Origin: Mobula hypostoma
Taxonomy: Eukaryota
Length of the DNA stretch: 64,000 nucleotides
Direction: 5' to 3'
Assembly: GCF_963921235.1 (NCBI RefSeq)
Contig: NC_086114.1
Span: forward strand, 61,566,001 to 61,630,000
Shown here: positions 2,299 through 63,840 of the stretch, one piece after another
Layout: the number at the start of each line of letters is the position of its first letter
Position numbering within the stretch: position 1 is the stretch's first letter
The notes under the pieces: generated by a model
Databases searched by the model: none
What the model saw: only the letters and a program-made list of their open reading frames with translations
What the model was told of the DNA's origin: nothing
Translations under genes and position numbers: made by a program

Positions 2299-3325
2299 GC
2301 AACACACAAAATGCTGGAGGAATTCAGTGGGTCAGGCAGCATCTGTGGAGAGAAATTTCCAGCCAAGACCCTTCATCAGAACTGAAAGAAAGATGGAAGA
2401 TAGCCCATGTAAAATGCTGGGGAGGAGTGGAGCAGGAGCTGGCAAGTGATTGGTGGATCCAGGTGAGGAGTGATAAGGTGTGGAATGAGAACAAGGTAAG
2501 AAGCTGTAAGGGTTGTAAGGGTGGAAGTGAAAAACAGTTGAAGAAGATAGAATCTGATAGAAGACGATGGTAGATCATGGAATAAAGGGAAAGTGATGGG
2601 GAGGGTTAATGGCTGGAGGAAGCTGTGGGCAATAGGCAGATGGAAAGGATAAGTAGAGGAAAGGTATCATGATGATGGGGATGGTGGGATAAAGGAAAAA
2701 AGGTAATGGACAGAGGAATTGGTTACTGGAAATTAGAGAAATCAATGTTGGAAACTGCCAAGGGGAATATGAGGTGCTGTTCCTCTAATCTGTGTCTGGC
2801 CTCAACTCAGCAGTGGACGAGGTTGTGGACCAACATGTTGGTGCGGGAATTGAAATGGCTGGCCACTGAAGATCCCAGCTGGCACAGCGAATGGAGCGAA
2901 GGTGTTCAGTGAAGCAGTCCTCCAGTCTGTGTTAGGTCTCACTGATGTAGAGGCTGCACTGGCAGCACTGAATGCAATGAATGACACTGATGGATTCGCT
3001 TGGGAAGGACAGCTTAGGGCCCTGAATGGTGGCAAGGGCCTCCTCCTCACCTTTATTCCACGGTCCCCACCTATCACCTCCCAGTGTGTTACATCAATCC
3101 CACTCTCTCCCCCTTCCACATTCATATCTACCCATCACCTGCCAGCTCTTGCTCCACCATTCTCTCCACCTTTTTACACCAGCTGTCTCCCCTCTTTCAT
3201 TCCAGTCCTGATGGCCTGAAATGTTGACTATCCATTTCCCTCCATAGGTGTTGACTGACACACTGAGCTCCTCCAGCATTGTGTATGTTGCTCCAGATTT
3301 CTGTAGTCTCTTGTCTCTCCTCAAA
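2299..3325 (-). mobile_element. Penelope-like element remnant with inverted terminal segment
   Basis: Minus-strand GIY-YIG remnant CIQCCQCSLYISET*HRLEDCFTEHLRS (~2895-2975); terminal repeat with decayed hammerhead on - (2352-2384) and inverted copy on + (3203-3230). Confidence 0.75.
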
Positions 3326-25641: not shown

Positions 25642-26234
25642 TAATAAAGCTGGTCGAAGAACACTGAGGCTGTCTACAAGAAGGGTCAGAGCCGTCTCTA
25701 TTTCCTGCCGGACGATGCTGAGGATGTTCTACAAGGTCTGTGGTGCCCAGTGCTATCATGTTTGCTGTTGTGTGCTGGGGCAGCAGGCTGAGGGTAGCAG
25801 ACACCAACAGAATCAACAATCTCATTCGTAAGGCCAGTGATGTTGTGGGGATGGAACTGGACTCTCTGACGGTGGTGTCTGAAAAGAGGATGCTGTCCAA
25901 GTTGCATGCCATCTTGGACAATGTCTCCCATCCACTACATAATGTTCTGGGTGGGCACAGGAGTACATTCAGCCAGAGACTCATTCCACCGAGATGCAAC
26001 ACAGAGCATCATAGGAAGTCATTCCTGCCTGTGGCCATCAAACTTTACAACTCCTCCCTTGGAGGGTCAGACACCCTGAGCCAACAGGCTGGTCCTGGAC
26101 TTATTTCATAATTTACTGGCATAATTTACATATTACTATTTAACTATTTATGGTTTTATTATTATTTATTATTTATGGTGCAACTGTAACGAAAACCAAT
26201 TTCCCCCGGGATCAATACAGTATGACTATGACTA
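25642..26234 (+). mobile_element. Rex1/Babar LINE 3' fragment with (tatgac)n tail
   Basis: VVCWGS...RKASDVVG...SHPLH...KSFLPVAIKLYN; nearly the same as 43749-44551. Confidence 0.85.
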
Positions 26235-31639: not shown

Positions 31640-33080
31640 ATCACAAACAAGAGAAAATCTGCAGATGCTGGAAATCCAAACACACACAAAATGCTGGAGG
31701 AACTTGGCATCTATGGAAAAGAGTACAGTTGACGTTTTGGGGCCAAATCCTTCATCAGGACTGGGGAAAAATATGAGGAGTCAGAGTAAGAAGATGGGGG
31801 AGAAGGGAGGAAGAAACACAAGGTGATAGGTGAAACTGGGGGGGAAGGGGGGACAAGGGGAAGGGAGGGGGGAAGGGAGACAGGGGAAAGTAAAGAGCTG
31901 GGAAGTTGAATGGTGAAAGAGATACACGGCTGGAGAAGGGGGAAACTGATTGGAGAGGGCAGAAGGCCATGGAAGAAAGAAAAGGAGGAGGGGCACCAGG
32001 AGGTGATGGGCAGGTAAGGAGATAAGGTGAGAGGGGGAAATGGGAATGGGGAATGGTGAGGGGGGGGGAGGCATTACTGGAAGTTTGAGAAATTGATGCT
32101 CATGCCATCGGGTTGGAGGCTACCCAGATGGAATATAAGGTATTGCTCCTCCAAACTGAGTGTGGCCTCATCGTGACAGTAGGGGAGGCCATGGACTGAC
32201 ATGTTGGAATGGAAATGGAAAGTAGAATTAAAATGGGTGGCCACTGGGAGATCCTGTTTTTTCTGGCAGACAGAGCGTAGGTGCTCAGTGAAGCAGTCTC
32301 CCAATCTACGCGGGGTCTCACTACACCAGGAGCACCGCACACCGTAGATGACCCCAACAGACTCACAGGTGAAGTGTCGCCTCATAGTAGTGAGTGAGAA
32401 GGTGAGTAGTGAGCAGGTGTAGTACTTGTTCTGCTTGCAAAGAAAATGCCAGGAGGGAGATCAATGGGGAGGGACAAACGGACAAGGGAGTTGCATAGGG
32501 AGCAGTCCCTGCGGAAAGCAGAAAGCAGGGAGAGGAGGGTGGAGGTAAAGATGTGCTTGGTGGTAGGATCCCACTTGAGAAGGTGTAAGTTACAGGGAGA
32601 ATTATGTGCTGGACGCGGAAGCTCGTGGGGTGGTAGGTGAGGCCAAGAGGAACCCTGTCCCTGGTGGGCTGGCGGGAGAATGAAGTGAGGGCAAACGTGC
32701 GCGAAGTGGAAGAGATGCGGTTGAGGGCAGCATTGATGGTGGAGGAAGGGAATCCTCTTTCTTTGAAGGAGGAGAACATCTTCTTAGTTCTGGAATGAAA
32801 AGCCTCATTTTGAGTGCAGATGCAGGTGAATCGGAGGAATTGAGAGAAGGGGATGGCATTTTCACAAGTTACAAGGTGGGAAGAGGTATAGTCCAGGAAG
32901 CTGTGAAAGTCAGTGGGTTTATAATAGACATCAGTAGAAAAGCTGTCTCCAGAGATAGAGACAGAGAGATCGAGAAAGGGGAGTGAGGTGTCAGAAATAG
33001 ACCAGGTACATTTGAAGGCAGGGTGGACTGTTGGCTTCTGATGGCCTGCTGATCTCCTCCACCATTTTGTGTGTGTTGCA
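31640..33080 (-). mobile_element. Penelope-like retroelement, 5'-truncated, with GIY-YIG endonuclease pseudogene and decayed 3' hammerhead
   Basis: FTCESVGVIYGVRCSWC..ETPRRLGDCFTEHLRSV..PVATHFN..EQYLIFHLGSLQPDG (32074..32385); FKERGFP..PLGLTYHP linker; short inverted end 33026-33080. Confidence 0.88.
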
Positions 33081-34323
33081 TAAATGTGTTAGATACTGGA
33101 GAAGGAATCACCTAGGAAGAGAAAGTTAGGTCCAAGAACATTTTTAGTAGGACAGATAGAAGAGGTTTCAACAGATGAGTGCTTGCTACATAGAGATAGA
33201 GAGCCACAGGCCACATGGATGAGCTGTCAGCAACAGGAAAGGAGCTCATGGGGGCAGTGCTGCTGGCTGGATCCTCCACTGTGGTGGCAGAACTGGTGGC
33301 TCTAAAGGGGGCTAATGTCATGGGAAGGGTTGACATTAAACTAAAATTAAAGTTGTCTTGCTGGATTAGTGCACAAATGAAATACAACAATTAATGGAAA
33401 TTGCACAAGATAATTGGTAACTGACATCTTCCACTGTCCCAGCAAATCAGCTAACAATTTACAATTAATGGTGAAATCCCAACAACAGACTTTTGAGCAA
33501 TATCTTGGGACATAATGAGAGTGGTCAGATTCATAGATATTACTAAAATGGGAGCACTTGTGATCAGCAAACAAAACATCAAAAAAAATGAGGGCAATTA
33601 AAGAAATAAAATTCTCTTCAAGCAGTACGTCAGAACTTCAGCAAATGAAGCTAATGACAGTTTTTAGGTTGTGGAAATATGCCCTCAACAGAGTCACAAA
33701 TCTCTCCCCAAAAATGAGATACAGAACAAAAGTCAAGAAAATTGTATGGATGAAAAGGTAAATACATCAACACAAAATTTATTTTAGCAACCTGCATTTC
33801 CTGGTGCATGCACAGATGATATCGTTGTACTCTGGAAAATCACCACCAGTACAGGTGCCACACATGAGAAAAATGAGACATAAAATCTATGGTGATATTA
33901 CACTCAGCCATGACCAAGCACACCCATTCCACAGCAGCAGTCAAAGCAGGGAAAATGCAGAAAAAGGCTATTCAACCTTTGATGGTATGAACAAACACAG
34001 TTCAGAGAAAGGGGCAGCGGGGATGGACCCAACTAAATGAGAGGACAACGGGAATGGAACCAGCTCAGAGAGGGCAGTGGAAACACACCCAGAGAGGGGA
34101 GCGGAAATACACCCAGAGTGCAGAGCTGGGAAGGACCAATCAGCAAGTTCAAAGCAGTCAATGCCATCATGTGTTTCACTTATGCCATTTTAAATGCCAG
34201 AATTTGATGGCAGAACAACTTGAGAGTTGAAGCTTCATGTTTCAGAAAACTCAGATTTTATATATCTATTATAATTCAGCAATTTAATTTTTCTGCTTTT
34301 CGATGATTAGCAGCTCAGCTTAC

Positions 34324-40205: not shown

Positions 40206-43200
40206 AGAAGGGTAGGGAAAGGAAGAGGATGGCAGCAGTGATAGGGGACTCTCTGGTTAGGGGGTCAGATAGGCGATTCTGTGGATGCATGAAAGAAACG
40301 CGGATGGTAGTTTGCCTCACAGCTGCCAGGGTCCAGGATGTCTCTGATCGTGTCCATGATATTTTGAAGTGGGAAGGAGAACAACCAGAGGTCGTGGTAC
40401 ATGTTGGTACCAACGAATTTGGTAGGAGAAGGGAGGAGGTTCTGAAAAAAGACTTACAGGGAGTTAGGAAAGAAGTTGAGAAGCAGGACCTCAAAGGTAG
40501 TAATCTCGGGATTACTGCCTGTGCCACGTATAGGAATATAGGAATAGAATGAGGTGGAGGATAAATGCGTAGCTGAGGAATTGAAGCAGGGGGCAGGGAT
40601 TCAGATTTCTGGATCATTGGGACCTCGTCTGGGGAAGATGTGGCCTGTACAAAAAGGGTGGGTTGCACTTGAATCGGAGGGGGACCAATATCCTGGTGGG
40701 AAGGTTTGCTAAGACTGTTGGGGAGAGTTTAAACTAGAATTGCTGGGGGGTGGGAAACGAACTGAAGTGACGGAGGAAAGGGAGGTTGGCTCACAAATAG
40801 AGAAAGTTTGAAGACAGTGCGAAAGGGAGGACAGGCAGGTGATAGAGAAGGGATGTGCTTAGTCCGATGGTTTGAAATGTGTCTATTTTAATGCAAGGAG
40901 TATCATGAATAAAGTGAATGAGCTTACAGCGTGGATCAGTACTTGGAGCTATGAAGTTGTGGCCATTTGCAGAGACTTGGATAGTGTAGGGGCAAGAATA
41001 GCTACTTCAAGTGCCAGGCTTGAGATGTTTCAGAAAGGGAGGCAAAAGAGGTGGGGGCGTGGCACTGTTGATCAGAGATAGTGTCACGGCTGCAGAAAAA
41101 GAGGAAGTCATGGAGGGATAGTCTCCGGAGTCTCTGTGGGTGGAAGTTAGGAATAGGAAGGGGTCAATAACTCTACTGGGTGTTTTTTAATAGACCACCC
41201 AACAGTAACAGAGACATCGAGGAGCAGATAGGGAGACAGATTCTGGAAAGGAGTAATAATAACAGGGCTGTTGTGGTGGGAGATATAAATTTATCAAATA
41301 TTGATTGGCATCTCCCTAGAGTGAAGGGTTTAGATGGGGTGGAGTTTATTAGGTGTGTTCAGGAAGGTTTCTTGACATAATGTGTAGATAAGCCTACAAG
41401 AGGAGAGGCTATACTTGATCTGGTATTGGGAAATGAACCTGGTCAGGTTTCAGGTCTCTCAGTGGGAGAGCATTTTGGAGATAGTGATCACAATTCTATC
41501 TCCTTTACCACAGCATTGGAGAGGGATAGGAACAGACAAGTTAGGAAAACACTTAATTGGAGTAAGGGGAACTATGAAGCTATCAGGCAGGAACTTGGAA
41601 GCGTTAATTGGAAACAGATATTCTCAGGGAAATGTACCAAAGAAATGTGGCAAATGTTTAGGGGATATTTGCATGGGGTTCTGAGTAGGTAGGTTCCAAT
41701 GTGACATGTAAAGGATGGTAGGGTACAAGATCCGTGGTGCACAAAGGCTGTTGTAAATCTATTCAAGAAGAAAAGAAGAACTTACAAAAATTTCAAAAAA
41801 CTAGATAATGATATGAATCTATAAGATTATAAGGCTAGCAGGAAGAAGCTTAAGAATGAAATTAGGAGAGCCAGAAGGGGCCATGAGAAGGCCTTGGTGG
41901 ACAGGATTAAGAAAAACCCCAAGGCATTCTACAAGTATGTGAAGAGCAAGAGGATAAGACGTGAGAGAATAGGACCAATCAAGTGTGACAATGGAAAAGT
42001 GTGTATAGAACAGGAGGAAATAGCAAAGGTATTTAATAAATACTTTGCTTCAGTATTCACTACGGAAAAGGATCTTGGCGATTAGAGGGATGACTTGCAG
42101 TGGACTGAAAAGCTTGAGCATGTAGATATTAAGGAAAAGGATGTGCTAGAGCTTTTGGAAAGCATCAAGTTGGATAAGTCACCAGGACTGGACGGGATGT
42201 ACCCCAGGCTACTGTGGGAAGTGAGGGAGGAGATTGCTGAGCCTCTGGCAATAATCTTTGCATCAGCAATGAGGAAGGGAGAGGTTCCAGAGGACTGGAG
42301 GGTTGCGGATGTTGTTCCATTATTCAAGAAAGGAAGTAGAGATAGCCCAGGAAACTATAGGCCAGCGAGTCTTACTTCAGTGGTTAGTAAGTTGTTGGAG
42401 AAGATCCTGAGAGGCAGGATTTATGAACATTTGGAAAGGCATAATATGATTAGTAGTCAGCGTGGCTTTGTCAAAGGCAGGTCATGCCTTACGAGCCTGA
42501 TTGAATTTTTTGAGGATGTGACTAAGCACATTGATGAAGATAGAGCCGTAGATGTAGTGTATATGGATTTTAGCAAGGCATTTGATAAGGTTCCCCATGC
42601 AATGCTTATTGAGAAAGTAAGGAGGTATGGGATCCAAGGGGACATTGCTTTGTGGATCCAGAACTGGCTTGCCCACAGAAGGCAAAGAGTGGTTGTAGAC
42701 AGGTCATATTCTGCATGAAGGCCGGTGACCAGTGGTGTGCCTCAGGGATCTGTACTGGGACTCCTACTCTTTGTGATGTTTATAAATGACCTGGATGAGG
42801 AAGTGCAGGGATGGGTTAGTAAATCTGCTGATGACACAAAGGTTGGGGGTGTTGTAGATAGTGTGGAGGCCTGTCAGAGGTTACAGCGGAACATTGATAG
42901 GATGCAAAACCTGGGCTGAGAAGTGGCAGATGGAGTTCAACCCAGATAAGTGTGAGGTGGTTCATTTTGGTAGGTCAAATATGATGGCAGAATATAGTAT
43001 TAAAGGTAAGACTCTTGGCAGTGTGGAGGATCAGAGGGATCTTGGGGTCCGAGTCCATAGGACACTCAAAGCTACTATGCAGGTTGACTCTGTGGTTAAA
43101 AAGGTATACAGTGCATTGGCCGTTATCAATCATGGGATTGAGTTTAGAAGCCGGGAGGTAATGTTGCAGCTATATAGCACCCTGATCAGACCCCACTTGG

Positions 43201-43720
43201 AGTACTGTGCTCAATTCTGGTTGCCTCACTACAGGAAGGACATGGAAACCATAGAAAGAGTGCAGAGGAGGTTTACAAGGATGTTGCCTGGATTGGGGAG
43301 CATGCCTTATGAGAAAAGGTTGACTAAACTTGGCCTTTTCTCCTTGGAGCGACGGAGGGTGAGAGGTGACTTAATAGAGGTGTATAAGATAATGAGAGGC
43401 ATTGATCATGTGGGTAGCCAGAGGCTGAAGCGGCTAGCACGAGAGGGCATAGTTTTAAGGTGCTTGGAAACAGGTTCAGAGGAGATATCAGGAGTAAGTT
43501 TTTTTACGCAGAGAGTAATGAGTGCGTGGAATCGGTTGCCGGTGGCAGCAGTGGAGTTCGAAATGATAGGTTCTTTTAAGAGACTCCTGGATGGCTGCAT
43601 GGAGCTTAGAAAAATAAAGGGCTACGGGTAAAGCCTAGGTAGCTCTAAGGTAGAGACATGTTTGGCACAGCTTTGTGGGCTGAAGGGCCTGTATCATGCT
43701 GTATGTTTTCTAATTTTTAT
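40206..43720 (+). mobile_element. CR1 LINE with ORF1 SGNH/GDSL esterase portion and complete but disrupted ORF2
   Basis: VIGDSLVR...VVHVGTNE (ORF1 esterase); NARSI, RPP, GD.N, SDH (APE); RT motifs DFSKAFDKV, GVPQGSVLG, ADD, EYCAQFW. Confidence 0.93.
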
Positions 43721-43748: not shown

Positions 43749-44551
43749 CTGAGGCTGAGTACAGGGCTACGGGAGGAAACTTTGTCACATGGTATGAGCA
43801 GAATTATCTGCAGCTTAATGTGAAAAAGACTAAGGAGCTGGTGGTAGACCTGAGAAGAGCTAAGGTACTGGCGACCCGTTTCCATCCAGGGGGTCAGTGT
43901 GGACATGGTGGAGGATTACAAATACCTGGGGATACGAATTGACAATAAACTGGACTGGTCAAAGAACACTGAGGCTGTCTACAAGAAGGGTCAGGGCCGT
44001 CTCCATTTCCTGAGGAGACTGAGGTCCTTTAACATCTGCCGGACGATGCTGAGGATGTTCTACGAGCCTGTGGTGGCCAGTGCGATCATGTTTGCTGTTG
44101 TGTGCTGGGGCAGCAGGCTGAGGGTAGCAGACACCATCAGAATCACAAACTCATTCATAAGGCCAGTGATGTTGTGGGGATGGAACTGGACTCTCTCATG
44201 GTGGTGTCTGAAAAGAGGATGCTGTCCAAGTTGCATGCCATCTTGGTCAATGTCTCCCATCCACTACATAATGTACTCGTTGGGCACAGGAGTACATTCA
44301 GCCAGAGACTCATTCCACCGAGATGCAACACAGAGCGTCATAGGAAGTCATTCCTGCCTGTGGCCATCAAACTTTACAACTCCTCCCTTGGAGGGTCAGA
44401 CACCCTGAGCCAATAGGCTGGTCCTGGACTTATTTCCTGGCATAATTTACATATTACTATTTAACTATTTATAGTTTTATTATTACTATTTAATTATTTA
44501 TGGTGCAACTGTAATGAAAACCAATTTCCCCCGGGATCAATAAAGTATGAC
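43749..44551 (+). mobile_element. Rex1/Babar LINE 3' fragment
   Basis: KTKELVVD, YKYLG..IDNKLDWS..RLHFLRRLRSF; aataaagtatgac tail; taata TSD (43744-43748 / 44552-44556). Confidence 0.88.
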
Positions 44552-46581
44552 TAATATGATAGAATTCACACTGCATGTTGAGAGGGAGAAGCTAATATCA
44601 AACATATTAATTTACAGTGGAGTAAAGGGAATTACAGCAGCTAGCCAAGGTTGATTGTCAGAGGATACTCCCAGGGATGACGGCTGGAGTTTCTGGGAGC
44701 AATTCAGAGGGTAATTCATAGATACATCTGAAAGAAGTAGTATTGTAATGGGGGTATATGATAACAGTGGCTGACAAGGGAAGTCAAAGACAGCATAAAA
44801 GCAAAAGAGAGGGCGTATAATTTAGCAAAAAAAATAGTGGGAAAGTAGAGGATTGGGAAGCTTTTAACAACCAACAGAAGGCAATTAAAACAAAATAAGG
44901 AGAGAAAAAATGAAATATGAAGGTAAACTAGCCAATGATATAAAAGAGGATACCAAAAGCTTTTTTTCTGATAAATAAATAGTGAGAAAGGAAAGATTGG
45001 AAATCAGACCATTGGAAAACGTGGGACGAAGAAATGATGGACAAACACAGTAAGCATTTTGTGTATTCTTCACTGTGGAAGGCACTAACAGTATGCCAGA
45101 AATTTGAAAGTGTCAGGGGGCAGGAGTGAGTGATGGTGTCTATTGCTAAGGAGAACGTACTTGGGCAGCTAAAAGGTCTAAAGGTAGACAAGTCACCTGG
45201 ACCAGGTGGACTACATTGCAGAGTTACGGGCCAGTTAGCCTGACTTCAGTGGGTGGGAAGATGTTGGAGTCCATTATTAAGAATAAGGCTTCAGGGTACA
45301 TTATAAAATAGGCCAAAATCAGCATGATTTCCTAAAGGGGAAATCTTGCCTGACAAATCTTTTGGAATTCTTTGATGAAATAACAGGCAAAATCAACAAA
45401 GGGAAATCAGTGGATGCTGTTTACTTGCATTTTCAGAAGAAGTTTGACAAAATGTTATAATGCTTCTTTCAAGATAAGAGCCAATGATACTACAGGAAAG
45501 ATACTCGCATGGATGGAAGATTGAGTGACTAACAGAAGGCAAATAGTGGGAATGAAGGGAGCCTTTTCCGGTTGGCTGCTGGTGACTACTTAAGTTCCTC
45601 GGTCATTGATACATAACGTGAAAAGAAGCTGTCCCAACTCAGGGGGTCAAGGTTGGGACCGCTTCTTTTCACGTTATATATCAGTGACTTGGATGGCAAA
45701 ATCATTAACTTTGTGGCTAAGTTCGCAGATACAGAAATAGGTCAGACCACACTTAGAATATTGTGAGCAGTTTTGAACCCCTTATCTAAGAAAGGATGTG
45801 CTTGTATTGGACAGGGTCCAGAGGAGGTTCATGAGAATGATGTCAGGGATGAAAAAGTTAATGCATGAGGAGCTTTTGATGACTCTGAGCTGTACTTGCT
45901 TTGAGTTTAGAAGGGAGGGGGTGGGGGGGGGTTATCTCACTAAAACCTATCGAATATTGAATATTAAGTGGATGTGGAGAGGATGTTTCCTATAGTGAGG
46001 GTGTTTAGGACTAGAGGGCACAGCCTCATAATATAGTGCCGCCCCTTTAGAAGATAAGACGAATTTCTTTAGCCAAAGAGTGGTAAATCTGTGAAATTCA
46101 CTGACACAGACAGCTCTGGGTGCGCAGTCACTGGATATATTTAAAGTGGAGGTTGATAATTTCTTGATTAGGACGGGTGTCAAAGGGAGAAGGCAGGAGA
46201 AAGAGGTTGAGAGGGATAATAAATCAGCCATGATAGATTGGCGAAGCATAATCCTGCTCCTATGTGGTATGGTCTTATATGATGGTATGTGCCAATGATG
46301 CTACTGCACCTATGCACACATGCACTTATATATATGGCAATAAACTCAAGTTGTGCAGCAGAATTGAGGAATTCATTAACACAAAGGATCAATTTATATC
46401 AATATCACAAACACAAGAAAATCTGCAGATGTTGGAAATCCAAAACAACACACAAAAACATGCAGGAGGAAAAATGCTTGAAACGAGCTAACAGTCAACA
46501 TTACGGGCTGAGACCCTTCATCAGAATTTATATCAATAATACATTTCAATTATCTACCACAATTCACACCTGGACACGTAC

Positions 46582-46627
46582 CTTCGACTGGCTTTGTGAC
46601 TATTCCTGTAAATCCTCCCACTACTCC
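46582..46627 (-). CDS. VPS13C: VPS13C coding exon GVVGGFTGIVTKPVE(G)
   Basis: ttttttcag acceptor, 46 nt, gtacgt donor; phases match both neighbours. Confidence 0.95.
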
Positions 46628-46789
46628 CTGAAAAAACAAACATTTAGAAATAATTTTTTTACATGATGCAATATTGCAAACAACATAATGAGCCATCATG
46701 GAAAGCGGCTCAAAATATATATATGATAAGTTTTATAGAGCAATGAAAAAAAATAAGTCTCAAAACAAGGGAAGATAATGAAAATTTTC

Positions 46790-47970
46790 TGATTGACAGA
46801 ATTAATGTTGGGTTGGAAAGGCAAGGCCTAATCAGGGACAATCAACATTGCTTTGTCAAGGGAAGATCCTGTCAAGTTAAGTTGACTAAATTCTTTGAAG
46901 AAATAACAGTGTATTGATGAGGTAAGTAGATGTGATGTGACAGACTTTGATTAGGTCCTACATGGAAGACCGGTTTAAAAGCTTAGGGACTATGAAATCC
47001 AGGGAAAGTTAACAAACTGGATCCAAAATTAGCTTGGCATTAGAGAAAGATGTGATGGTAGAGGGCTGTTTTGTAATTGGGTGCCTGTAATTAGTAGTGT
47101 CCCATACGGACCAGTGCTGAGATCCAAGCTGTTCATATTTCCAAATGTGAATATGGGGAGGATGATCAATAAGTGTGCAGACAACACAAAGACTGACAAA
47201 ACTGTTGATGGAGTAAAAGGCTTAGGCTGTCGAGACATACTGATGCATTACAGAAATGGCTGAACAACGCAGCTGGAGTGTAATCCAGACATTTTGAGAG
47301 TACAAATGAGGCTCAGATATACACCATGAGTGGTAGGGTCTTGGAGAGCTTTAAGGAACAGTAGGACCTTGAAGCAAAAGCCCAGAGATCATTGAAGGTA
47401 AAAATGCAGACAGACAACGTGGGTAGGAAGGCTTATAGGATACTGGCATGGGATTAATGGAATACAGAAGTAGGGAGGTTGTGCTTCAACTTCATAAAAT
47501 CTTGATCGCATTTCATCTGCGAACTGTTCATTCTTCTGGTAATCAAACTACAGATGATGCAGAGGAGATTCAACAGGATATTGCCTGGGATGGAGCAGTT
47601 TGATCTGTTCTCCCTGGAGCAGAGGAGTTTAATAGGGGAATGACTAAGGTATATAAAATTGAGGGGTAGGGTAGGCTGCAGGATAATTATCTCTATATTT
47701 GATGCAGTTAAAATTGAGGACATATTTAGGGTAAGGAGGAAGAGACTTGGAGTGGATCTCAAGAGGACAATACCTGGAATGCACTGCCTGTGAGAGTGGT
47801 TTAAATTGGGACACAAACCCTATTTAAGGAATGTATAGATGCATGTTTCAGACATAGAAGGCCTTCCACTTGCTAGGATGAAGTGCAAGGAGATGGAAAG
47901 TCCCTTACTAGTCAACATGAATAACTAGGGCCGAGTGACCCATTTCTATGCTGAATGATTCTATGACTAT
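46790..47970 (+). mobile_element. Old degraded CR1 RT/3' fragment
   Basis: QHCFVKGRSC, SSVPYGPVL, KCADNTK remnants; tctatgactatga tail. Confidence 0.65.
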
Positions 47971-48789
47971 GACCCCATGACAAAAAAAACTTTAATAACT
48001 TCGAAATGAAGATTGATTAGTACAGTTGTCCTGCTCAATGATCTGCATGAGCTGTTCTTTGGCCTGTAGAACAGTATCAGCTATACCACTGAAGGGAGTG
48101 GAAATGGGAAGCAAAAAAAAACCAAAGGTCTGAAATAGTTTTGAATATTTTGCCATGTACTCTAATTAAGTTCAGATACCAAAAATAAAAACCTGTCCTC
48201 TAAGAAGCTCCCTGCCAAAGTTTAAGGTGCAGGTTGCTGTTTTACTGATGTTACATAGGCTAACAGTCTAAAAGCGAAAACTCCTCCTTGACATGTTGCA
48301 TACAAAACACATTTTGACCATTCTTTGTACTTCAAATGACATGAAGTCAGTGCTTTCCCACGAAGAAAAAAGGGTACTAAGGTGCCTTCCATTCCTGAAG
48401 AAGGAGGCAAGGTAACTTAAGGCAACACAAAGCTAGTAACTTCAGACCAAATTATACTGTCGGCACTGATTCAGTATCTTGGAACATATAACAGCAACAA
48501 AGAACAAAGAAATGCAGTCAACTAATAAAATAAGTCACCTCCCATAACAGCTAATTTCCACCCTAGTAAGATAGTGATGCAAAGTCTTCTGAAGAGCACC
48601 AGTGATTTCTCAGTTTCATTTGCATCTCTCCAAGAGCTGGAAGTCATAAGTAGTGTATCGGGGGGGGGGGGCGTGGAGTGGAGGGGAGCGCGGGATAGCT
48701 AGCTGCGGATAGGCCAGATTTTCTCAGCTACGCAGGCATGGTAAGTGTCGCTTCAGATGCCTAAACACAGCAGCAAGTAAAAGGAAGGT

Positions 48790-49130
48790 AGGGTCAAGCG
48801 GAGCAGCCATTGTCGAAATGTGTCAATGTTAGAGTGGGAAGGCTTTGGTTTAACAGGCTTTGGCAAGAACAGATGAGAAAATGCAAGATTTTTTTTTCCA
48901 TTGACTGTAAAGTTCTGTATTTTTTTTTTGGTACAGAGTAGTCAGGATGGAATGCTCCTCCTGTCGCTATTTGGGAATTCAGGATATCTGGTGGTTTCCC
49001 TGATAAATACATCAGTGGGAAGTGCACCCAACTTCAACTCCTGACTGATCAAATCAAGGAACTGTAACTGGAGTTGGATGTACTCAGGGTCGTCTGGGAA
49101 GCTGAAGACATTACAGATGAGACTTTTGAT
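48790..49130 (+). mobile_element. CR1 5'UTR/ORF1 N-terminal fragment (zinc finger plus leucine-zipper remnant)
   Basis: Translates with frameshift as MECSSCR.WE...PDKYISGKCTQLQLLTDQIKEL*LELDVLRV. Confidence 0.6.
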
Positions 49131-49225
49131 TATACCCAGAACACATTAGAGAACTTTAAGAGACACTTAGATAAGCACATGAATATGAGGAAGATGGAGA
49201 GATATGGACATTGTTTAGGTAGGAG

Positions 49226-49384
49226 GAACACACACAAAATGCTGGTGGAATGCAGCAGGCCAGACAGCATCCATAGGAAGAAGCACAGTCGACGTTTCAG
49301 GTCGAGACCCTTCGTCAGGACTAACTGAAAGAAGAGATAGTAAGAGATTTGAAAGTGGAAGGGGGAGGAGGAGATCCAAAATGA
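49226..49384 (-). mobile_element. Penelope-like element 3' terminal fragment
   Basis: Same terminal sequence as 31680-31800 (acacacaaaatgctgg...gcagcatc...gacgtttc...ccttcgtcaggact). Confidence 0.8.
49286..49323 (-). ncRNA. Minimal type-I hammerhead ribozyme motif, intact core
   Basis: Minus strand: uaguc-CUGACGA-agg[gucucga]ccu-GAAA-c-GUC-gacug; helix I uaguc/gacug, helix II agg/ccu, palindromic ACGU in place of helix III. Confidence 0.8.
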
Positions 49385-49574
49385 AAGGAGAAGACACTGG
49401 GTTACAGCCACCCAGGGGAGATGACACCGTAGGCAGTGTGGGAAAGAGCAGAAGCACAGCAGGTGCACTGACGCCATGCCCCAGGACCAGGCCCTGGCCC
49501 TCATGCCACAGCATCGCCCGTAATAGCTACCCACCAACATGGCTAGAGGACACTATCAAACCAGGCGCTTTTAT

Positions 49575-49830
49575 AGAGATACAGCGCAGAACAGGCCTTT
49601 CTGGACCAACAAGCCGTACCACCCAGCAACACACATTTTTAACCTTAGCCTAATTACAGGACAATTTCCAATGTCCAATCAACCTACTAACCGATACACC
49701 TTTGAAGAATGGGAGTAAACCGGAGCACCTGGAGGAAACCCACACACTCTCAGGAAGAACATGACATTAAAACTGAACTCCAAACTCTGATGCCTTGAGC
49801 TGTAATAGCATCTCATTAACTGCTACGCTA
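49575..49830 (-). mobile_element. V-SINE/HE1-like SINE
   Basis: Minus strand tagcgtagcagttaa head, gggtttcctccaggtgctccggtttactccca central domain. Confidence 0.7.
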
Positions 49831-49851
49831 ATACTATTTTATATGTGCTAA

Positions 49852-50021
49852 ACAACAGGAATTCTACAGATGCTGGAAATTCAAGCAACACCCATAAAAG
49901 TTGCTGGTGAATGCAGCAGGCCAGGCAGCATCTCTAGGAAGAGGTGCAGTCGACGTTTCAGGCCGACTGCACCTCTTCCTAGAGATGCTGCCTGGCCTGC
50001 TGCGTTCATCAGCAACTTTTA
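49852..50021. repeat. Fold-back mini Penelope-derived insertion (59-bp inverted arms) with 14-bp TSD
   Basis: Arms 49894-49952 / 49964-50022, 2 mismatches, 11-nt loop; tttatatgtgctaa at 49838-49851 and 50022-50035. Confidence 0.88.
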
Positions 50022-50559
50022 TTTATATGTGCTAATATTATTTTGTGACTATATGCACTATTGTGTGGTTGTATGTACTGTGTTTTGCACCTTGGTGCTG
50101 GAGGAACACTGTTTTGTTTAGCTGTATACATGTGTATGGCTGAATGACAATTTAACTTGAACTAGGTTAATAATGGGCACACCACCAATATCTGTGCAGT
50201 TTTGAGATATATCAAAAAAGAAATCAAAGTAATTAGTGTTGATATGATTAATATTGTTAATATACCGGGGCCTGATGGGGCAGTCACGGAGAGGAAGACA
50301 CAATCTTCAAGTACAAATTTAAAATCTTACTTCAAGACAGCACTTGATGCTGTGTCAATTGTTGACTTTAAACTGGAGTTGACTTTGAAGCTATTAACCA
50401 GAGGGACTAGGGACATGGGTAGAAGATGGCGTAAGGATTCACGGTTTCATCCAATGACACAACTGGACCAAAGACCAGATCGTCTTTGCTGTTGTCCTCA
50501 ACTTTTACAATTAGTGTTGCACAAAACTGTCCTCTTTGAAAAACAGGAATTCTACTTGC

Positions 50560-50723
50560 CCGTAAAAAGCCTTTTCCTCCTTTGGCCAAACTTTCCCCAA
50601 AGTCCTTGGGTTGACGGTTCATTTCTTCCCTACGTTTCTGCTGATACTCTTTATCCATTGTGATAGCAGCTAAACCTTTTCCAACTGAGCCTGTGATTCG
50701 CGATACCACACCAGCTGCACCGC
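50560..50723 (-). CDS. VPS13C: VPS13C coding exon (G)GAAGVVSRITGSVGKGLAAITMDKEYQQKRREEMNRQPKDFGESLAKGGKGFLR
   Basis: ctgcag acceptor, 164 nt; ends at non-canonical GCAAGT donor; overlaps ORF 50407..50709; phase 0 joins GVVGG exon. Confidence 0.95.
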
Positions 50724-60909: not shown

Positions 60910-63840
60910 GGTGACGGTTACTTCTTCAGCAGTTTGAACTGTGCTAGCACGTGGAGGTCAGCCAGTGAGAACAGCGGGAAGAGTTTAAAAGGAAGACAGA
61001 TTTACAGAGTGGGCATCAGAGGAGTGGGTGATGGAGTAGTACAAAAAAGGACAGGTTGCACTTGAATCAGAGGGGGACTAATATCCTGGTGGGAAGGTTT
61101 GCTAAGGCTGTTGGGGAGAGTTTAAACTAGAATTGCTGAGGGGTGGGAACCAAACTGAAGTGACAGAGGAAAGGGAGGTTGGTTCACAAATAGAGAAAGC
61201 TTGGAGACAGTGCGAAAGGGAGGATAGACAGGTGACAGAGAAGGGACGCACTCAGTCCGATGGTTTGAGATGTGTCTATTTTAATGCAAGGAGTATCATG
61301 AATAAAGCGGATGAGTTTAGAGCGTGGATCAGCACTTGGAGCTATGATGTTGAGGCCATTACAGAGATCTGAATGGTGCAGGGGCAGGAATGGCTACTTC
61401 AAGTGCCAGGCTTTAGATGTTTCAGGAAGGATAGGGAGGGAGGTAGTAGAGGTGGGGGCATGGCACTGTTGATCAGAGATAGTGTCACAGCTGCAGAAAA
61501 GGAGGAAGTCATCGAGGGGTTGTCTACGGAGTCTCTGTGGGTGGAAATTAGGAATAGGAAGGGGTCAATAACTCTACTGGGTGTTTTTTTATAGACCACC
61601 CAATAGTAACAGGAACACCGAGGAGCAGATAGGGAGACAGATTCTGGAAAGGAGTAATAATAACAGGGTTGTTGTGGTGGGAGATTTTAATTTCCCAAAT
61701 ATTGATTGGCATCTTCCTAGAGTGAGGGGTTTAGATGGGGTAAAATTTGGTAGGTGTGTTCAGGAAAGTTTCTTGACACAATATGTAGATAAGCCTGCAA
61801 GATTAGAGGTGTACTTGATCTGGTATTGGGAAATGAACCTGGTCAGGTGTCAGGTCTCTCAGTAGGAGAGCATTTTGGAGATAGTGATCACAATTCTATC
61901 TCATTTACTGTAGCATTGGAGACGGATAGGAACAGACAAGTTAGGGAAACATTTAATTGGAGTAAGGGGAACTATGAGGCTATCAGTTAGGAACTTGAAA
62001 GCATAAATTGGAAACAGATGTCCTCAGGGAAACGTATAGAATAAATGTGGCAAATGTTCAGGGGATATTAGCATGGGGCTCTCAGTAGGTACTTTCCAAT
62101 GAGATATGGAAAGGACGGTAGGGTACAAGATCCGTGGGGTACAAAGGCTGTTGTAAATCTATTCAAGAAGAGCTTACGAAAGGTTCAAAAAACTGGGTAA
62201 TGATAGGAATCTAGAAGATTATAAGGCTAGCAGGAAGAAGCTTAAGAATGAAATTAGCAGAGCCAGAAGGGGCCATGAGAAGGCCTTGGGGGACAGGATT
62301 AAGGAAAACCCCAAGGCACTCTACAAGTATGTGAAGTGCAAGAGGATAAGACATGAGAGAATAGGACCAATCAAGTGTGACAGTGGAAAAGTGTGTATGG
62401 AACCGGAGGAAACAACTGAGGTACTTAATGAATACTTTGCTTCAGTATTCACTACGGAAAAGGATCTTGGCGATTGTAGGGATGACTTGCAGTGGACTGA
62501 CAAGCTTGAGAATGTAGATATTAAGGAAAAGGATGTGCTGGAGCTTTTGGAAAGCATCAAGTTGGATAAGTCAGCGGGACCGGATGGGATGTACCTCAGG
62601 CTACTGTGGGAAGCGAGGGAGGAGATTGCTGAGCCTCTGGCAATGATCTTTGCATCATCAAAGAGGACGGGAGAGAATCCGGAGGATTGGAGGGTTGCGG
62701 ATGTTGTTCTCTTATTCAAAAAAGGGAGTAGGGATAGCCCAGGAAATTATAGGCCTGTGAGTCTTACTTCAGTGGTTGGTAAGTTGATGGAGAAGATCCT
62801 GAGAGGCAGGATTTATGAATATTTGGAGAGGCATAACGTGATTAGGAATAGTCAGCATGGCTTTGTCAAAGGTAGGTCGTGCCTTATGAGCCTGATGAAT
62901 TTTTTGAGGAAGTGACTAAGCACATTGATGAAGGTCGAGCCGTAGATGTAGTGTATATGGATTTTAGCAAGGCATTTGATAAGGTACCCCATGCAAGGCT
63001 CATTAAGAAAGTAAGGAGGCATAGGATCCAAGGGGACATTGCTTTGTGGATCCAGAACTGACTTGCCCACAGAAGGCAAAGAGTGGTTGTAGATGGGTCA
63101 TATTCTACATGGAGGCCGGTGACCAGTGGTGCGCCTCAGGGATCTGTTCCGGGACCTCTACTCTTCATGAGTTTTATAAATGACCTGGATGAGGAAGTGG
63201 AGGGAAGGGTTAGTAAATTTGCATACGGTACATTGGCCTTCATACATCGTGGGATTGAATTTAAGAGCCAAGAGGTATTGTTGCAGCTATATAGGACTCT
63301 GGTCAGACCCCACTTGGAGTACTGTGCTCAGTTCTGGTCGCCTCACTACAGGAAGGACGTGGAAACTATAGAAAGGATACAGAGGAGATTTACAAGGATG
63401 TTGCCTGGAATGGGAAGCATGCCTTATGAGAATAGGTTGAGTGAACTTGGCCTTTTCTCCTTGGAGCGACAGAGGATGAGAGGTAACCTGATAGAGGTGT
63501 ATAAGATAATGAGAGGCATTGATCATGTGGATAGTCAGAGGCTTTTCCCCAGGGCTGAAATGGCTAGCACGAGAGGCCATAGTTTTAAGGTGCTTGGAAG
63601 TAGGTACAGAGGAGATATCAGGGGTAAGTTTTTTTTACGCAGAGAGTGGTGAGTGCATGGAATGGGCTGCCAACGGCCGTGGTGGATGCGGAAACTGTAG
63701 GGTCTTTTAAGAGACCCCTGGATGACTACATGGAGCTTAGAAAAATAGAGGGCTATGGGCAAAGCCTAGGTAGTTCTAAAGTAGGGACTTTGTGGGTCGA
63801 AGGACCTGTATTGTGCTGTAAGTTTCCTATGTTTCTATGT
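60910..63840 (+). mobile_element. CR1 LINE (subfamily of 40206-43720) with internal deletions
   Basis: Colinear with 40650-43720 from ~61040; APE and RT ORF fragments; RT deletion near 63220; ttcctatgtttctatgt tail. Confidence 0.92.

What the first reader, a model, noticed from the sequence alone, without database searches (positions are those of the whole stretch)
49286..49323. Hammerhead ribozyme with an intact core, in sense orientation inside a VPS13C intron
Seen: the minus strand reads uaguc CUGACGA agg-gucucga-ccu GAAA c GUC|gacug. All conserved core nucleotides, helix I, helix II and a GUC triplet are present, with predicted cleavage between 49291 and 49290. Known: Penelope-like elements carry minimal type-I hammerheads that lack a stable helix III and are thought to cleave as dimers through a palindromic ACGU. 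Inference: it lies on the VPS13C transcribed strand, in the GC-AG intron 46628-50559, so it could cut the nascent pre-mRNA if a partner copy supplies helix III. It is the only copy in the window with an undamaged core.
Basis: partly seen in the sequence, partly recalled or inferred. Interest (0 to 1): 0.75.

Follow-up and report, generated by a model that had tools for sequence, protein, structure and literature searches.

The report
Penelope retrotransposon hammerhead copy in intron
The small self-cutting-RNA (hammerhead) motif is really there, but it is one ordinary, recently inserted copy of the tail of a hugely abundant Penelope-like jumping gene, and nothing indicates that it cuts the VPS13C transcript.

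Summary
The minus strand 49323..49286 carries a complete minimal type-I hammerhead motif: helix I of 5 bp, CUGACGA, helix II, GAAA, the palindrome ACGU in place of helix III, and a GUC site at 49291|49290. It is the only such motif in the window. It lies in sense inside the GC-AG intron 46628-50559 of VPS13C.

It is not a locus-specific ribozyme. It is the 3' tail of a Penelope-like retrotransposon (PLE). Summed contig depth here is about 2.9 million against about 11 on unique intron. Related copies, in the window and on an independent contig, sit just downstream of reverse-transcriptase/GIY-YIG ORF remnants.

The core is most simply intact because the copy is young. All four CpGs are kept, and the motif shows one difference from the family majority.

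No other copy in the window has an intact core, so no partner in cis was seen. Energy models put the active dimer well above misfolded states. Published PLE hammerheads are inert as single motifs, and in the one case tested cleavage needed the element's own protein. No RNA data could test cleavage.

The scan has met this same kind of copy before on other DNA of this genome. This is an ordinary case of low interest.

The parts
49286..49323 (-). Minimal type-I hammerhead motif. Helix I is 49323-49319/49290-49286, CUGACGA 49318-49312, unpaired A 49311, helix II 49310-49299, GAAA 49298-49295, palindrome ACGU 49295-49292, C17 at 49291. The predicted scission is 49291|49290.
   Evidence: Sequence; exact pattern hit; the only descriptor hit in the window and 0 of 300 simulations.
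49224..49400 (-). 5'-truncated retrocopy of a Penelope-like element's 3' end: upstream CT-rich untranslated part, the hammerhead, and an ~65-nt tail ending in GTGTGTGTT. The 3' end is at about 49224-49227. The 5' end is uncertain and lies somewhere between 49396 and 49500.
   Evidence: Alignment with other window copies. Summed depth is 2.9 million in 49220-49359, 0.29 million in 49360-49499 and 942 in 49500-49639, against about 11 on unique intron, with loose ends at 49227 and 49396. It matches L001 4351-4441 at 79% over 91 nt, E 6e-18, and the tail ends at the same point.
46628..50559 (-). The VPS13C intron that holds the copy (donor GCAAGT, acceptor CAG).
   Evidence: The reading frame runs ...GFLR | GVVGG across the junction. 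No RNA contig was available to confirm the junction.
50560..50723 (-). Upstream VPS13C exon (matches residues 3473-3526 of the solved VPS13C chain).
   Evidence: 49/54 identical, E 3.2e-26; VPS13A gives 2.2e-15.
46581..46627 (-). Downstream VPS13C exon (GVVGGFTGIVTKPVEG).
   Evidence: Read from the sequence. Further exons were seen at about 37.4 kb and 34.4 kb.
49884..50014 (-). Neighbouring fold-back copy of the same tail in the same intron. It has two inverted arms, keeps GAAACGUC and GACUG, but lacks the CUGANGA box.
   Evidence: The hairpin has -126.8 kcal/mol, z -18.75.
46492..46524 (-). Decayed sense copy of the hammerhead in the next intron (GAAA has become GUAA, CGUC has become UGUU).
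31731..31758 (-). Decayed hammerhead copy (G12 changed to A) at the 3' end of a 5'-truncated Penelope-like element.
32077..33088 (-). Penelope-like ORF remnants upstream of the 31.7-kb hammerhead copy. The reverse-transcriptase C-terminal / HTH_animal region is 33088-32366, and the GIY-YIG endonuclease region is 32460-32077 with the YIG part deleted.
   Evidence: 97 homologues, rays first, carrying PF26215 with RVT_1 or GIY-YIG. BLASTP to the GIY-YIG region of P0027 gives E 8e-14. Colinear with L001 3127-4098 at 72% over 984 nt, E 2e-160.
2352..2379 (-). Another decayed copy of the hammerhead with its tail (tail runs to 2302).

Best explanation
The motif is part of a dead-on-arrival, 5'-truncated retrocopy, about 180-270 bp long, of the 3' end of a Penelope-like retrotransposon. 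It happened to insert in sense orientation into a VPS13C intron of a ray genome.

In the parent element the minimal hammerhead sits downstream of the RT/GIY-YIG ORF. There it is thought to process the element's own multimeric or tandem RNA as a dimer, probably helped by the element's protein.

In this lone intronic copy the motif is intact because the insertion is young, not because it is selected here. As a monomer it cannot form helix III. It most likely does nothing to the VPS13C pre-mRNA and is removed with the intron. The structure, the family membership and the youth of the copy are shown. The lack of activity is inferred.
For: 1. The copy belongs to a massively amplified family. Summed contig depth is 2.9 million over 49220-49359 against about 10-12 on unique intron, in two DNA runs of two organisms.

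2. The Penelope link was tested.
- A related decayed copy at 31758-31731 lies about 320 nt downstream of ORF remnants. Their homologues carry HTH_animal with RVT_1 or GIY-YIG.
- On an independent contig, L001, the same ORF remnant (E 2e-160) is followed by a hammerhead plus tail. That stretch matches this very copy at 79% over 91 nt (E 6e-18) and ends at the same GTGTGT.

3. The architecture matches the published PLE min-hammerhead (PMC4209133): no helix III, palindromic 15.2/16.2, helix I of 4-5 bp, and an unpaired base before helix II.

4. The copy looks young.
- All four CpGs of the motif are kept, while older copies in the window have lost them.
- The only listed family-majority difference inside the motif is at 49302. 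It turns a U.G pair of helix II into U-A.

5. Inactivity is the expected state.
- No partner with an intact core exists in the window.
- The motif's lowest-energy fold (-10.7 kcal/mol) pairs GACG of the core with CGUC of the site. The helix I plus helix II state is only -6.7, and the double-hammerhead dimer is -10.9 against -21.4 for two monomers.
- In its native context the fold has no excess stability, z +0.30.
- Single PLE min-hammerheads gave no detectable cleavage (PMC4209133).
- The Anolis PLE hammerhead needs the element's protein, and no RNA-seq reads end at its site (PMC11167929).

6. About 44% of the related Xenopus retrozyme copies are intronic (preprint 10.64898/2026.07.22.740005), so an intronic copy is commonplace.
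Against: - No RNA evidence either way. The only candidate RNA runs are Logan contigs, guessed to be RNA, and they show no exon depth, so cleavage at 49291|49290 was not tested.
- The genome holds a very large number of near-identical copies. A partner RNA in trans, or an expressed Penelope protein, cannot be excluded.
- I could not resolve whether the copy is present at the orthologous site in the related organism B, because repeats break the contigs. Its age and any constraint on it rest on CpG retention and closeness to the family majority.
- The 5' end of the copy is not defined.
Confidence: 0.88

Rival explanations
1. The copy is a working ribozyme on the host transcript. It pairs with another family copy (in cis or in trans), or is assisted by Penelope protein, and then cuts the VPS13C pre-mRNA in this intron, lowering or tuning VPS13C output.
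For: - All catalytic-core letters, helix I and helix II are intact and in sense.
- The family is extremely abundant, so partner RNAs may exist.
- PLE hammerheads do cleave as dimers, or with the element's protein, in vitro (PMC4209133, PMC11167929, review PMC6765202).
Against: - No copy with an intact core lies elsewhere in the 64 kb, and the nearest copy is locked in a hairpin.
- Intermolecular contacts would be only 4 bp (helix III) plus 5 bp (helix I), and the active dimer is energetically disfavoured.
- Reported dimer activity is low (PMC4209133).
- No RNA-seq ends were found at the site in Anolis (PMC11167929).
- A slow hammerhead placed in an intron does not prevent splicing (work of Dye et al. 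and Bentley et al., as summarised in PMC2995048).
- At least four sense copies sit in introns of this one gene (49.3, 49.9, 46.5 and 31.7 kb), which argues that sense copies are tolerated.
Confidence: 0.05
2. It is a unit of a non-LTR retrozyme: a non-autonomous, tandemly repeated hammerhead element that makes small circular RNAs, not a plain truncated Penelope copy.
For: - Animal retrozymes are derived from Penelope terminal repeats and share type-I hammerheads (PMC7229834; preprint 10.64898/2026.07.22.740005).
- Many family contigs begin exactly at the 5' edge of the hammerhead (loose ends at 49322).
Against: - There is no head-to-tail tandem here. The copy is single, with unique flanks.
- Retrozyme hammerheads normally keep a short helix III with a loop, whereas this one has none.
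- The same hammerhead plus tail follows a Penelope ORF remnant at two loci.
Confidence: 0.05
3. It is a chance resemblance to a hammerhead in CT-rich intronic sequence.
For: No Rfam hammerhead model matches, even at E up to 10.
Against: Zero of 300 simulated windows give such a motif. The motif is inherited from a repeat family that carries it at several loci. The Rfam models require a helix III, which this class lacks by design.
Confidence: 0.01

Closest known systems
Minimal hammerheads (min-HHR) of Penelope-like elements (Cervera & De la Pena 2014, PMC4209133; Lunse, Weinberg & Breaker 2017, as cited in PMC6765202)
   Same: Type-I topology. No helix III, with a palindromic ACGU that can only pair between two copies. 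Short helix I of 5 bp. An unpaired base between A9 and helix II. Position in the terminal repeat or 3' tail behind an RT/GIY-YIG ORF. Mostly dispersed single copies from truncated elements.
   Different: Helix II is short (4-5 pairs, against 7-8 in the Schistosoma families). In this copy and its close relatives it closes with G.U (or A-U) and not G10.1-C11.1. Position 7 is C. The host is a ray, and the copy number is very high.
Hammerhead of the Anolis carolinensis Poseidon element PAc (PMC11167929)
   Same: A vertebrate Penelope-like element with a hammerhead made of stems I and II only. Genomic copies end in a defined 'tail' downstream of it.
   Different: For PAc, cleavage was shown in vitro, only with the element's protein, and was abolished by C3 or G8 mutations. 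Nothing was assayed here. Sequence similarity to PAc was not examined.
Non-LTR retrozymes of animals (PMC7229834; preprint 10.64898/2026.07.22.740005)
   Same: Derived from Penelope terminal repeats. Type-I hammerheads that work as dimers. Many monomeric copies are scattered in introns (about 44% in Xenopus).
   Different: Retrozymes are head-to-tail tandem units that give circular RNAs. This is a single unit with no tandem partner.
Conserved intronic ribozymes of amniotes (HH9/HH10 hammerheads, the CPEB3 HDV-like ribozyme; PMC10919898)
   Same: A self-cleaving motif in sense inside an intron of a protein-coding gene.
   Different: Those are single-copy and orthologously conserved, fold stably as monomers, and have measured self-scission. 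This is one copy of a very abundant repeat, lacks helix III, and matches no Rfam hammerhead model.

Membership tests
Hammerhead ribozyme (catalytic core) | Conserved boxes C3-U4-G5-A6-N7-G8-A9 and G12-A13-A14, the A15.1-U16.1 pair, and a cleavable N-U-H triplet | tested here: met
   CUGACGA at 49318-49312, GAAA at 49298-49295, GUC at 49293-49291. The A15.1-U16.1 pair can form only between two copies.
Hammerhead ribozyme (catalytic core) | Helices I and II flanking the core, with helix II closed by G10.1-C11.1 | tested here: inconclusive
   Helix I has 5 bp and helix II has 4-5 bp. However, the closing pair is G49310.U49299 (or A49311-U49299), not G-C. Older copies at 46.5 and 31.7 kb have C at this place.
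Hammerhead ribozyme (catalytic core) | A helix III that forms within one molecule | tested here: not met
   A15.1-C15.2 is followed directly by G16.2-U16.1 with no loop, so an intramolecular helix III is impossible. The lowest-energy fold is a misfold.
Hammerhead ribozyme (catalytic core) | Match to the curated covariance models (Rfam Hammerhead_1, _3, _II, HH9, HH10) | tested here: not met
   No hit at gathering score in the window, and none at E up to 10 in 49000-49600.
Hammerhead ribozyme (catalytic core) | Site-specific self-cleavage that gives 2',3'-cyclic phosphate and 5'-OH ends | not testable with these tools
   Only Logan contigs are available and no raw RNA reads.
Penelope-like element min-hammerhead | No helix III or loop 3; palindromic 15.2/16.2 that allows a double-hammerhead dimer | tested here: met
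   ACGU at 49295-49292. The dimer structure can be drawn without crossing pairs, energy -10.9 kcal/mol.
Penelope-like element min-hammerhead | [quoted passage not shown] | tested here: met
   Helix I of 5 bp and unpaired A49311, as described in PMC4209133.
Penelope-like element min-hammerhead | Located in the terminal repeat or 3' tail of an element that encodes RT plus a GIY-YIG endonuclease | tested here: met
   Not at this truncated copy itself, but at homologous copies. In the window, 33088-32077 (HTH_animal and GIY-YIG remnants) is followed by the hammerhead at 31758. In L001, the ORF remnant at 3127-4098 is followed by hammerhead plus tail at 4351-4441, which matches this copy at E 6e-18.
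Non-LTR retrozyme | Head-to-tail tandem repeats of a hammerhead-bearing unit | tested here: not met
   There is no tandem copy. The nearest family copy, about 660 nt away, is an inverted fold-back without the CUGANGA box.
Conserved functional intronic ribozyme (HH9/HH10/CPEB3 type) | Single-copy, orthologously conserved, stable monomeric fold | tested here: not met
   It is a member of an enormously repeated family, has no monomeric fold and has no Rfam match. Orthologous conservation could not be resolved.

The most novel reading that the evidence does not exclude
The genome carries an enormous number of near-identical Penelope tails and probably has recently active elements. Under those conditions intact sense-strand min-hammerheads in introns, such as this one, might be cut in vivo. 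That could happen by pairing in trans with other family RNAs or with help from the Penelope protein. Penelope expansion would then impose a widespread ribozyme 'tax' on host pre-mRNAs, VPS13C among them, or a form of regulation.
Probability: 0.04. Interest if true: 0.6.

Novelty: new member of a known kind. Interest (0 to 1): 0.15.

Why it matters
As it stands it matters little. It is one more copy of a known ribozyme-bearing retrotransposon tail, in a genome that holds a vast number of them.

Its use is as a clean example: an intact core, sense orientation, and defined exons on both sides. That makes it suitable for a question that is still open, namely whether Penelope min-hammerheads ever cleave in vivo, and whether dispersed intronic copies affect host transcripts. 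End-mapping at this site, or a genome-wide comparison of intact and broken copies in sense and antisense within introns, would address that question directly.

Tried and rejected
- Rfam, at gathering scores over the whole window and at E up to 10 over 49000-49600, gave no hammerhead family. The only hits were weak chance matches to mir-378, TeloSII_ncR30 and SMAD5-AS1_2.
- Searching papers for the motif's letters found nothing.
- Exact-pattern scans of metagenome contigs (two) and viral contigs (one) for the family's hammerhead found nothing.
- Pfam on ORFs of 130 aa or more found only LINE-type RT and endonuclease, none next to this copy.
- Pfam on the ATG-started ORFs upstream of the 31.7-kb and 2.3-kb copies, and on the stop-to-stop segments, gave nothing. 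The Penelope nature of these remnants appeared only through the homologue search and BLASTP.
- The long ORF 49540-49130 that runs through the copy is low-complexity and was rejected as a gene.
- Sequencing runs: no run is on record as RNA. The 'RNA?' runs X24 and X15 show no depth on either exon and only sparse unique intron pieces of depth 2-4. I treat them as uninformative, whether they are low-coverage DNA or filtered, so there is no statement on expression, splicing or RNA ends.
- Orthology of the insertion in organism B could not be resolved, because k-mer contigs break at the repeat.
- The Lunse et al. paper (PMC5785218) is not held.
- No target-site duplication or exact 5' boundary could be defined from the window alone.

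Full report
**What is in the sequence**

On the minus strand, 49323..49286 reads UAGUC CUGACGA A GGGUCUCGACCU GAAA C GUC GACUG. This has every element of a type-I hammerhead except a helix III.

- Helix I is 49323-49319 paired with 49290-49286. It has five pairs, the outermost U.G.
- The CUGANGA box is 49318-49312, with C at the free position 7.
- A49311 is unpaired.
- Helix II is 49310-49299: G.U, G-C, G-C, U-A around a CUCG loop.
- The GAAA box is 49298-49295.
- C-G-U-C follows directly, so A15.1-C15.2-G16.2-U16.1 forms the palindrome ACGU (49295-49292). C17 is 49291.

The fixed pattern CTGANGA-N13-GAAACGTC has a single exact hit in the window. Two further hits appear at up to 2 mismatches, against 0.33 expected. 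A descriptor of my own required both boxes, a palindromic 15.2/16.2, UH, and at least 3 pairs in helices I and II. It finds only this site on either strand, and nothing in 300 first-order Markov simulations of the window.

**Gene context**

The exon 50721-50560 (minus strand) translates to 54 residues. Of these, 49 are identical to residues 3473-3526 of the solved VPS13C chain (E 3.2e-26), and VPS13A scores 2.2e-15.

The exon ends ...GFLR and is followed by GCAAGT. The next exon, 46627-46581, begins GVVGG after a CAG acceptor. So 46628-50559 is a GC-AG intron of VPS13C and the motif is in sense.

Later exons lie at about 37.4 kb and 34.4 kb. No RNA contig was available to confirm the splice junction.

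**It is a copy of a repeat**

The motif and about 65 nt downstream of it, ending in ...CCAGCATTTTGTGTGTGTT at about 49224, recur in the window on the same strand.

- 31762-31679 is a copy with G12 changed to A.
- 2379-2302 is a copy in which the CG of the palindrome is lost.
- 46524-46492 is a copy that reads GUAAUGUU.
- 50014-49884 is a fold-back that lacks the CUGANGA box.
- Tail-only pieces lie on the plus strand at 33042-33077.

I laid Logan contigs at 90% likeness or better. Summed depth was 2.9 million over 49220-49359 in a DNA run of the source organism and 2.4 million in a related organism. Unique intron gave about 10-12. The tool warns that this figure is not a copy number, but it does show an enormously amplified family.

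Depth falls to 0.29 million in 49360-49499 and to 942 in 49500-49639. The copy's 5' end therefore lies between about 49396 and 49500. Its 3' end is at 49224-49227, where many family contigs diverge.

**The repeat is the tail of a Penelope-like element**

This link was tested here, not assumed.

Upstream of the decayed copy at 31758-31731, on the same strand, lie two stop-free segments.

- 33088-32366 has 97 homologues (best E 6e-65), led by rays: Hypanus sabinus, Mobula hypostoma and Leucoraja. These carry Pfam HTH_animal (PF26215), some with RVT_1 and some with GIY-YIG.
- 32460-32077 aligns to the GIY-YIG region of P0027 at E 8e-14, with the YIG part deleted.

An independent public contig, L001 (ENA assembly ERZ21784934), shows the same order.

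- L001 3127-4098 is colinear with window 33025-32096 (72% over 984 nt, E 2e-160).
- About 250 nt further on the same strand, L001 4351-4441 is a hammerhead plus tail. It matches the copy under study (49320-49230) at 79% over 91 nt, E 6e-18.
- That tail stops at the same GTGTGT.

An RT, then a GIY-YIG endonuclease, then a short untranslated stretch, a min-hammerhead and a short tail is the published layout of Penelope-like elements (PMC4209133, PMC6765202, PMC11167929). The neighbouring fold-back and the inverted tail pieces at the 5' ends of the truncated elements (window 33042-33077; L001 2869-2769) fit the inverted, 5'-truncated insertions I recall being described for Penelope elements.

**Why the core is intact**

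The only family-majority difference listed inside the motif is at 49302, where this copy has A and the family has G on the RNA strand. That turns a U.G pair of helix II into U-A.

C at position 7 and U at 11.1 are traits of the close family. A loose-end consensus reads AGTCCTGACGAAGGGTC, and the fold-back copy also has CCTGAAAC.

All four CpGs of the motif survive, whereas the older copies in the window have lost them. The simplest reading is youth, not selection at this locus.

**Would it cut the VPS13C pre-mRNA?**

The hammerhead needs A15.1-U16.1 and helix III. Here these can form only between two copies.

In a double hammerhead the catalytic core of one copy cuts the GUC of the other. For 49291|49290 to be cut, a partner with an intact core is therefore required. 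None exists in this 64-kb stretch of the gene.

The closest sense copy, about 660 nt upstream, lacks the core, and its GUC is inside a hairpin of -126.8 kcal/mol, z -18.75.

Nearest-neighbour energies ignore tertiary contacts. They give:

- -10.7 kcal/mol for the isolated motif's best fold, a misfold in which GACG of the core pairs with CGUC of the site;
- -6.7 for the helix I plus helix II state;
- -10.9 for the double-hammerhead dimer, against -21.4 for two monomers and -31.5 for an alternative duplex.

In its native context the region folds no better than shuffles, z +0.30, and the hammerhead is not in the optimal fold.

The published experiments point the same way.

- A single Penelope min-hammerhead gave no detectable cleavage, and dimers and trimers cleaved poorly (PMC4209133).
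- The Anolis Poseidon hammerhead cleaved only when the element's protein was added. Core mutants did not affect insertion. No RNA-seq reads began or ended at the site (PMC11167929).
- Even a working but slow hammerhead placed in an intron did not impair splicing, whereas a fast ribozyme did (summarised in PMC2995048).
- About 44% of the related Xenopus retrozyme copies are intronic (preprint 10.64898/2026.07.22.740005).

**What could not be tested**

- No raw RNA reads exist for this organism in the tools.
- The runs guessed to be RNA show no depth on either exon and only sparse, low-depth unique intron pieces. They say nothing about expression, splicing or RNA ends.
- It could not be resolved whether organism B, whose intron flanks differ by about 1.5-2.3%, has the insertion at the orthologous site.

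**Comparison with known families, and verdict**

The element works like, and is a member of, the Penelope min-hammerhead class. Its particulars are a short helix II, a G.U (or A-U) closing pair in place of G10.1-C11.1, and C at position 7.

- It fails the Rfam hammerhead models, as expected for a class without helix III.
- It is not a retrozyme, because there is no tandem.
- It does not resemble the conserved intronic ribozymes of amniotes, because it is a multi-copy repeat with no monomeric fold.

Its functional inference is unsupported and improbable.

Other agents of this scan have reported the same kind of Penelope tail copies elsewhere in this genome. I treated those notes as leads only. 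Interest is low.

Noticed in passing
window 49884-50014 (both arms; see 49840-50040): A fold-back copy of the same Penelope tail, about 660 nt upstream in the same intron. It forms a near-perfect hairpin of about 60 bp (-126.8 kcal/mol, z -18.75). The inverted arm ends at the C-G step of the hammerhead's GUC|G site. It is the subject of another first-stage note (s1-144788). As sense-strand double-stranded RNA in a pre-mRNA it could be a substrate for editing or dicing.
   Followed up: partly
window 31640-33090 (minus strand): A 5'-truncated, decayed Penelope-like element in another VPS13C intron. It has HTH_animal and GIY-YIG ORF remnants (the YIG part is deleted), a hammerhead with G12 changed to A, and an inverted tail piece at its 5' end (33042-33077, plus strand). 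The independent contig L001 shows the same layout, with an inverted tail at 2869-2769.
   Followed up: yes
window 49299 compared with 46502 and 31739: The young, highly amplified subfamily has U at hammerhead position 11.1 (CCUGAAAC). Older copies have C (CCCGUAA, CCCCAAAA). This looks like a CpG transition in a master copy that broke the conserved G10.1-C11.1 pair without stopping amplification. It hints that ribozyme fitness is only weakly constrained.
   Followed up: partly
window 49322 and 49227 (loose ends): Many family contigs diverge exactly at the 5' edge of the hammerhead (49322) and at the end of the tail (49227). Others run on past 49227 with GCTTGAATTTCCAGC..., as in the copies at 49.85, 46.4 and 31.64 kb. 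The family therefore has two tail lengths and a preferred 5' truncation point at the ribozyme edge.
   Followed up: no
window 49021-49084 (+): A weak Rfam match to the mir-378 precursor (23.9 bits against a gathering score of 80; E 0.02 for a 600-nt search). Most likely chance.
   Followed up: no
window 40651-43657 and 61044-63788: Two copies, about 90% identical, of a 3-kb LINE (RVT_1 hits), about 20.4 kb apart on the plus strand. A second pair at 25738-26228 and 44068-44553 is 95-97% identical.
   Followed up: no
window 50554-50559 (minus strand): The intron has a GC donor (GCAAGT) and not GT. This was read from the sequence and the protein frame only, with no RNA support available.
   Followed up: partly
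runs X24 and X15: Runs labelled 'RNA?' give no depth on the VPS13C exons but sparse, low-depth pieces of unique intron, and a high repeat-to-unique depth ratio of the same broad order as the DNA runs (roughly 4-fold lower). They behave like low-coverage DNA, or their exon contigs were filtered out.
   Followed up: no
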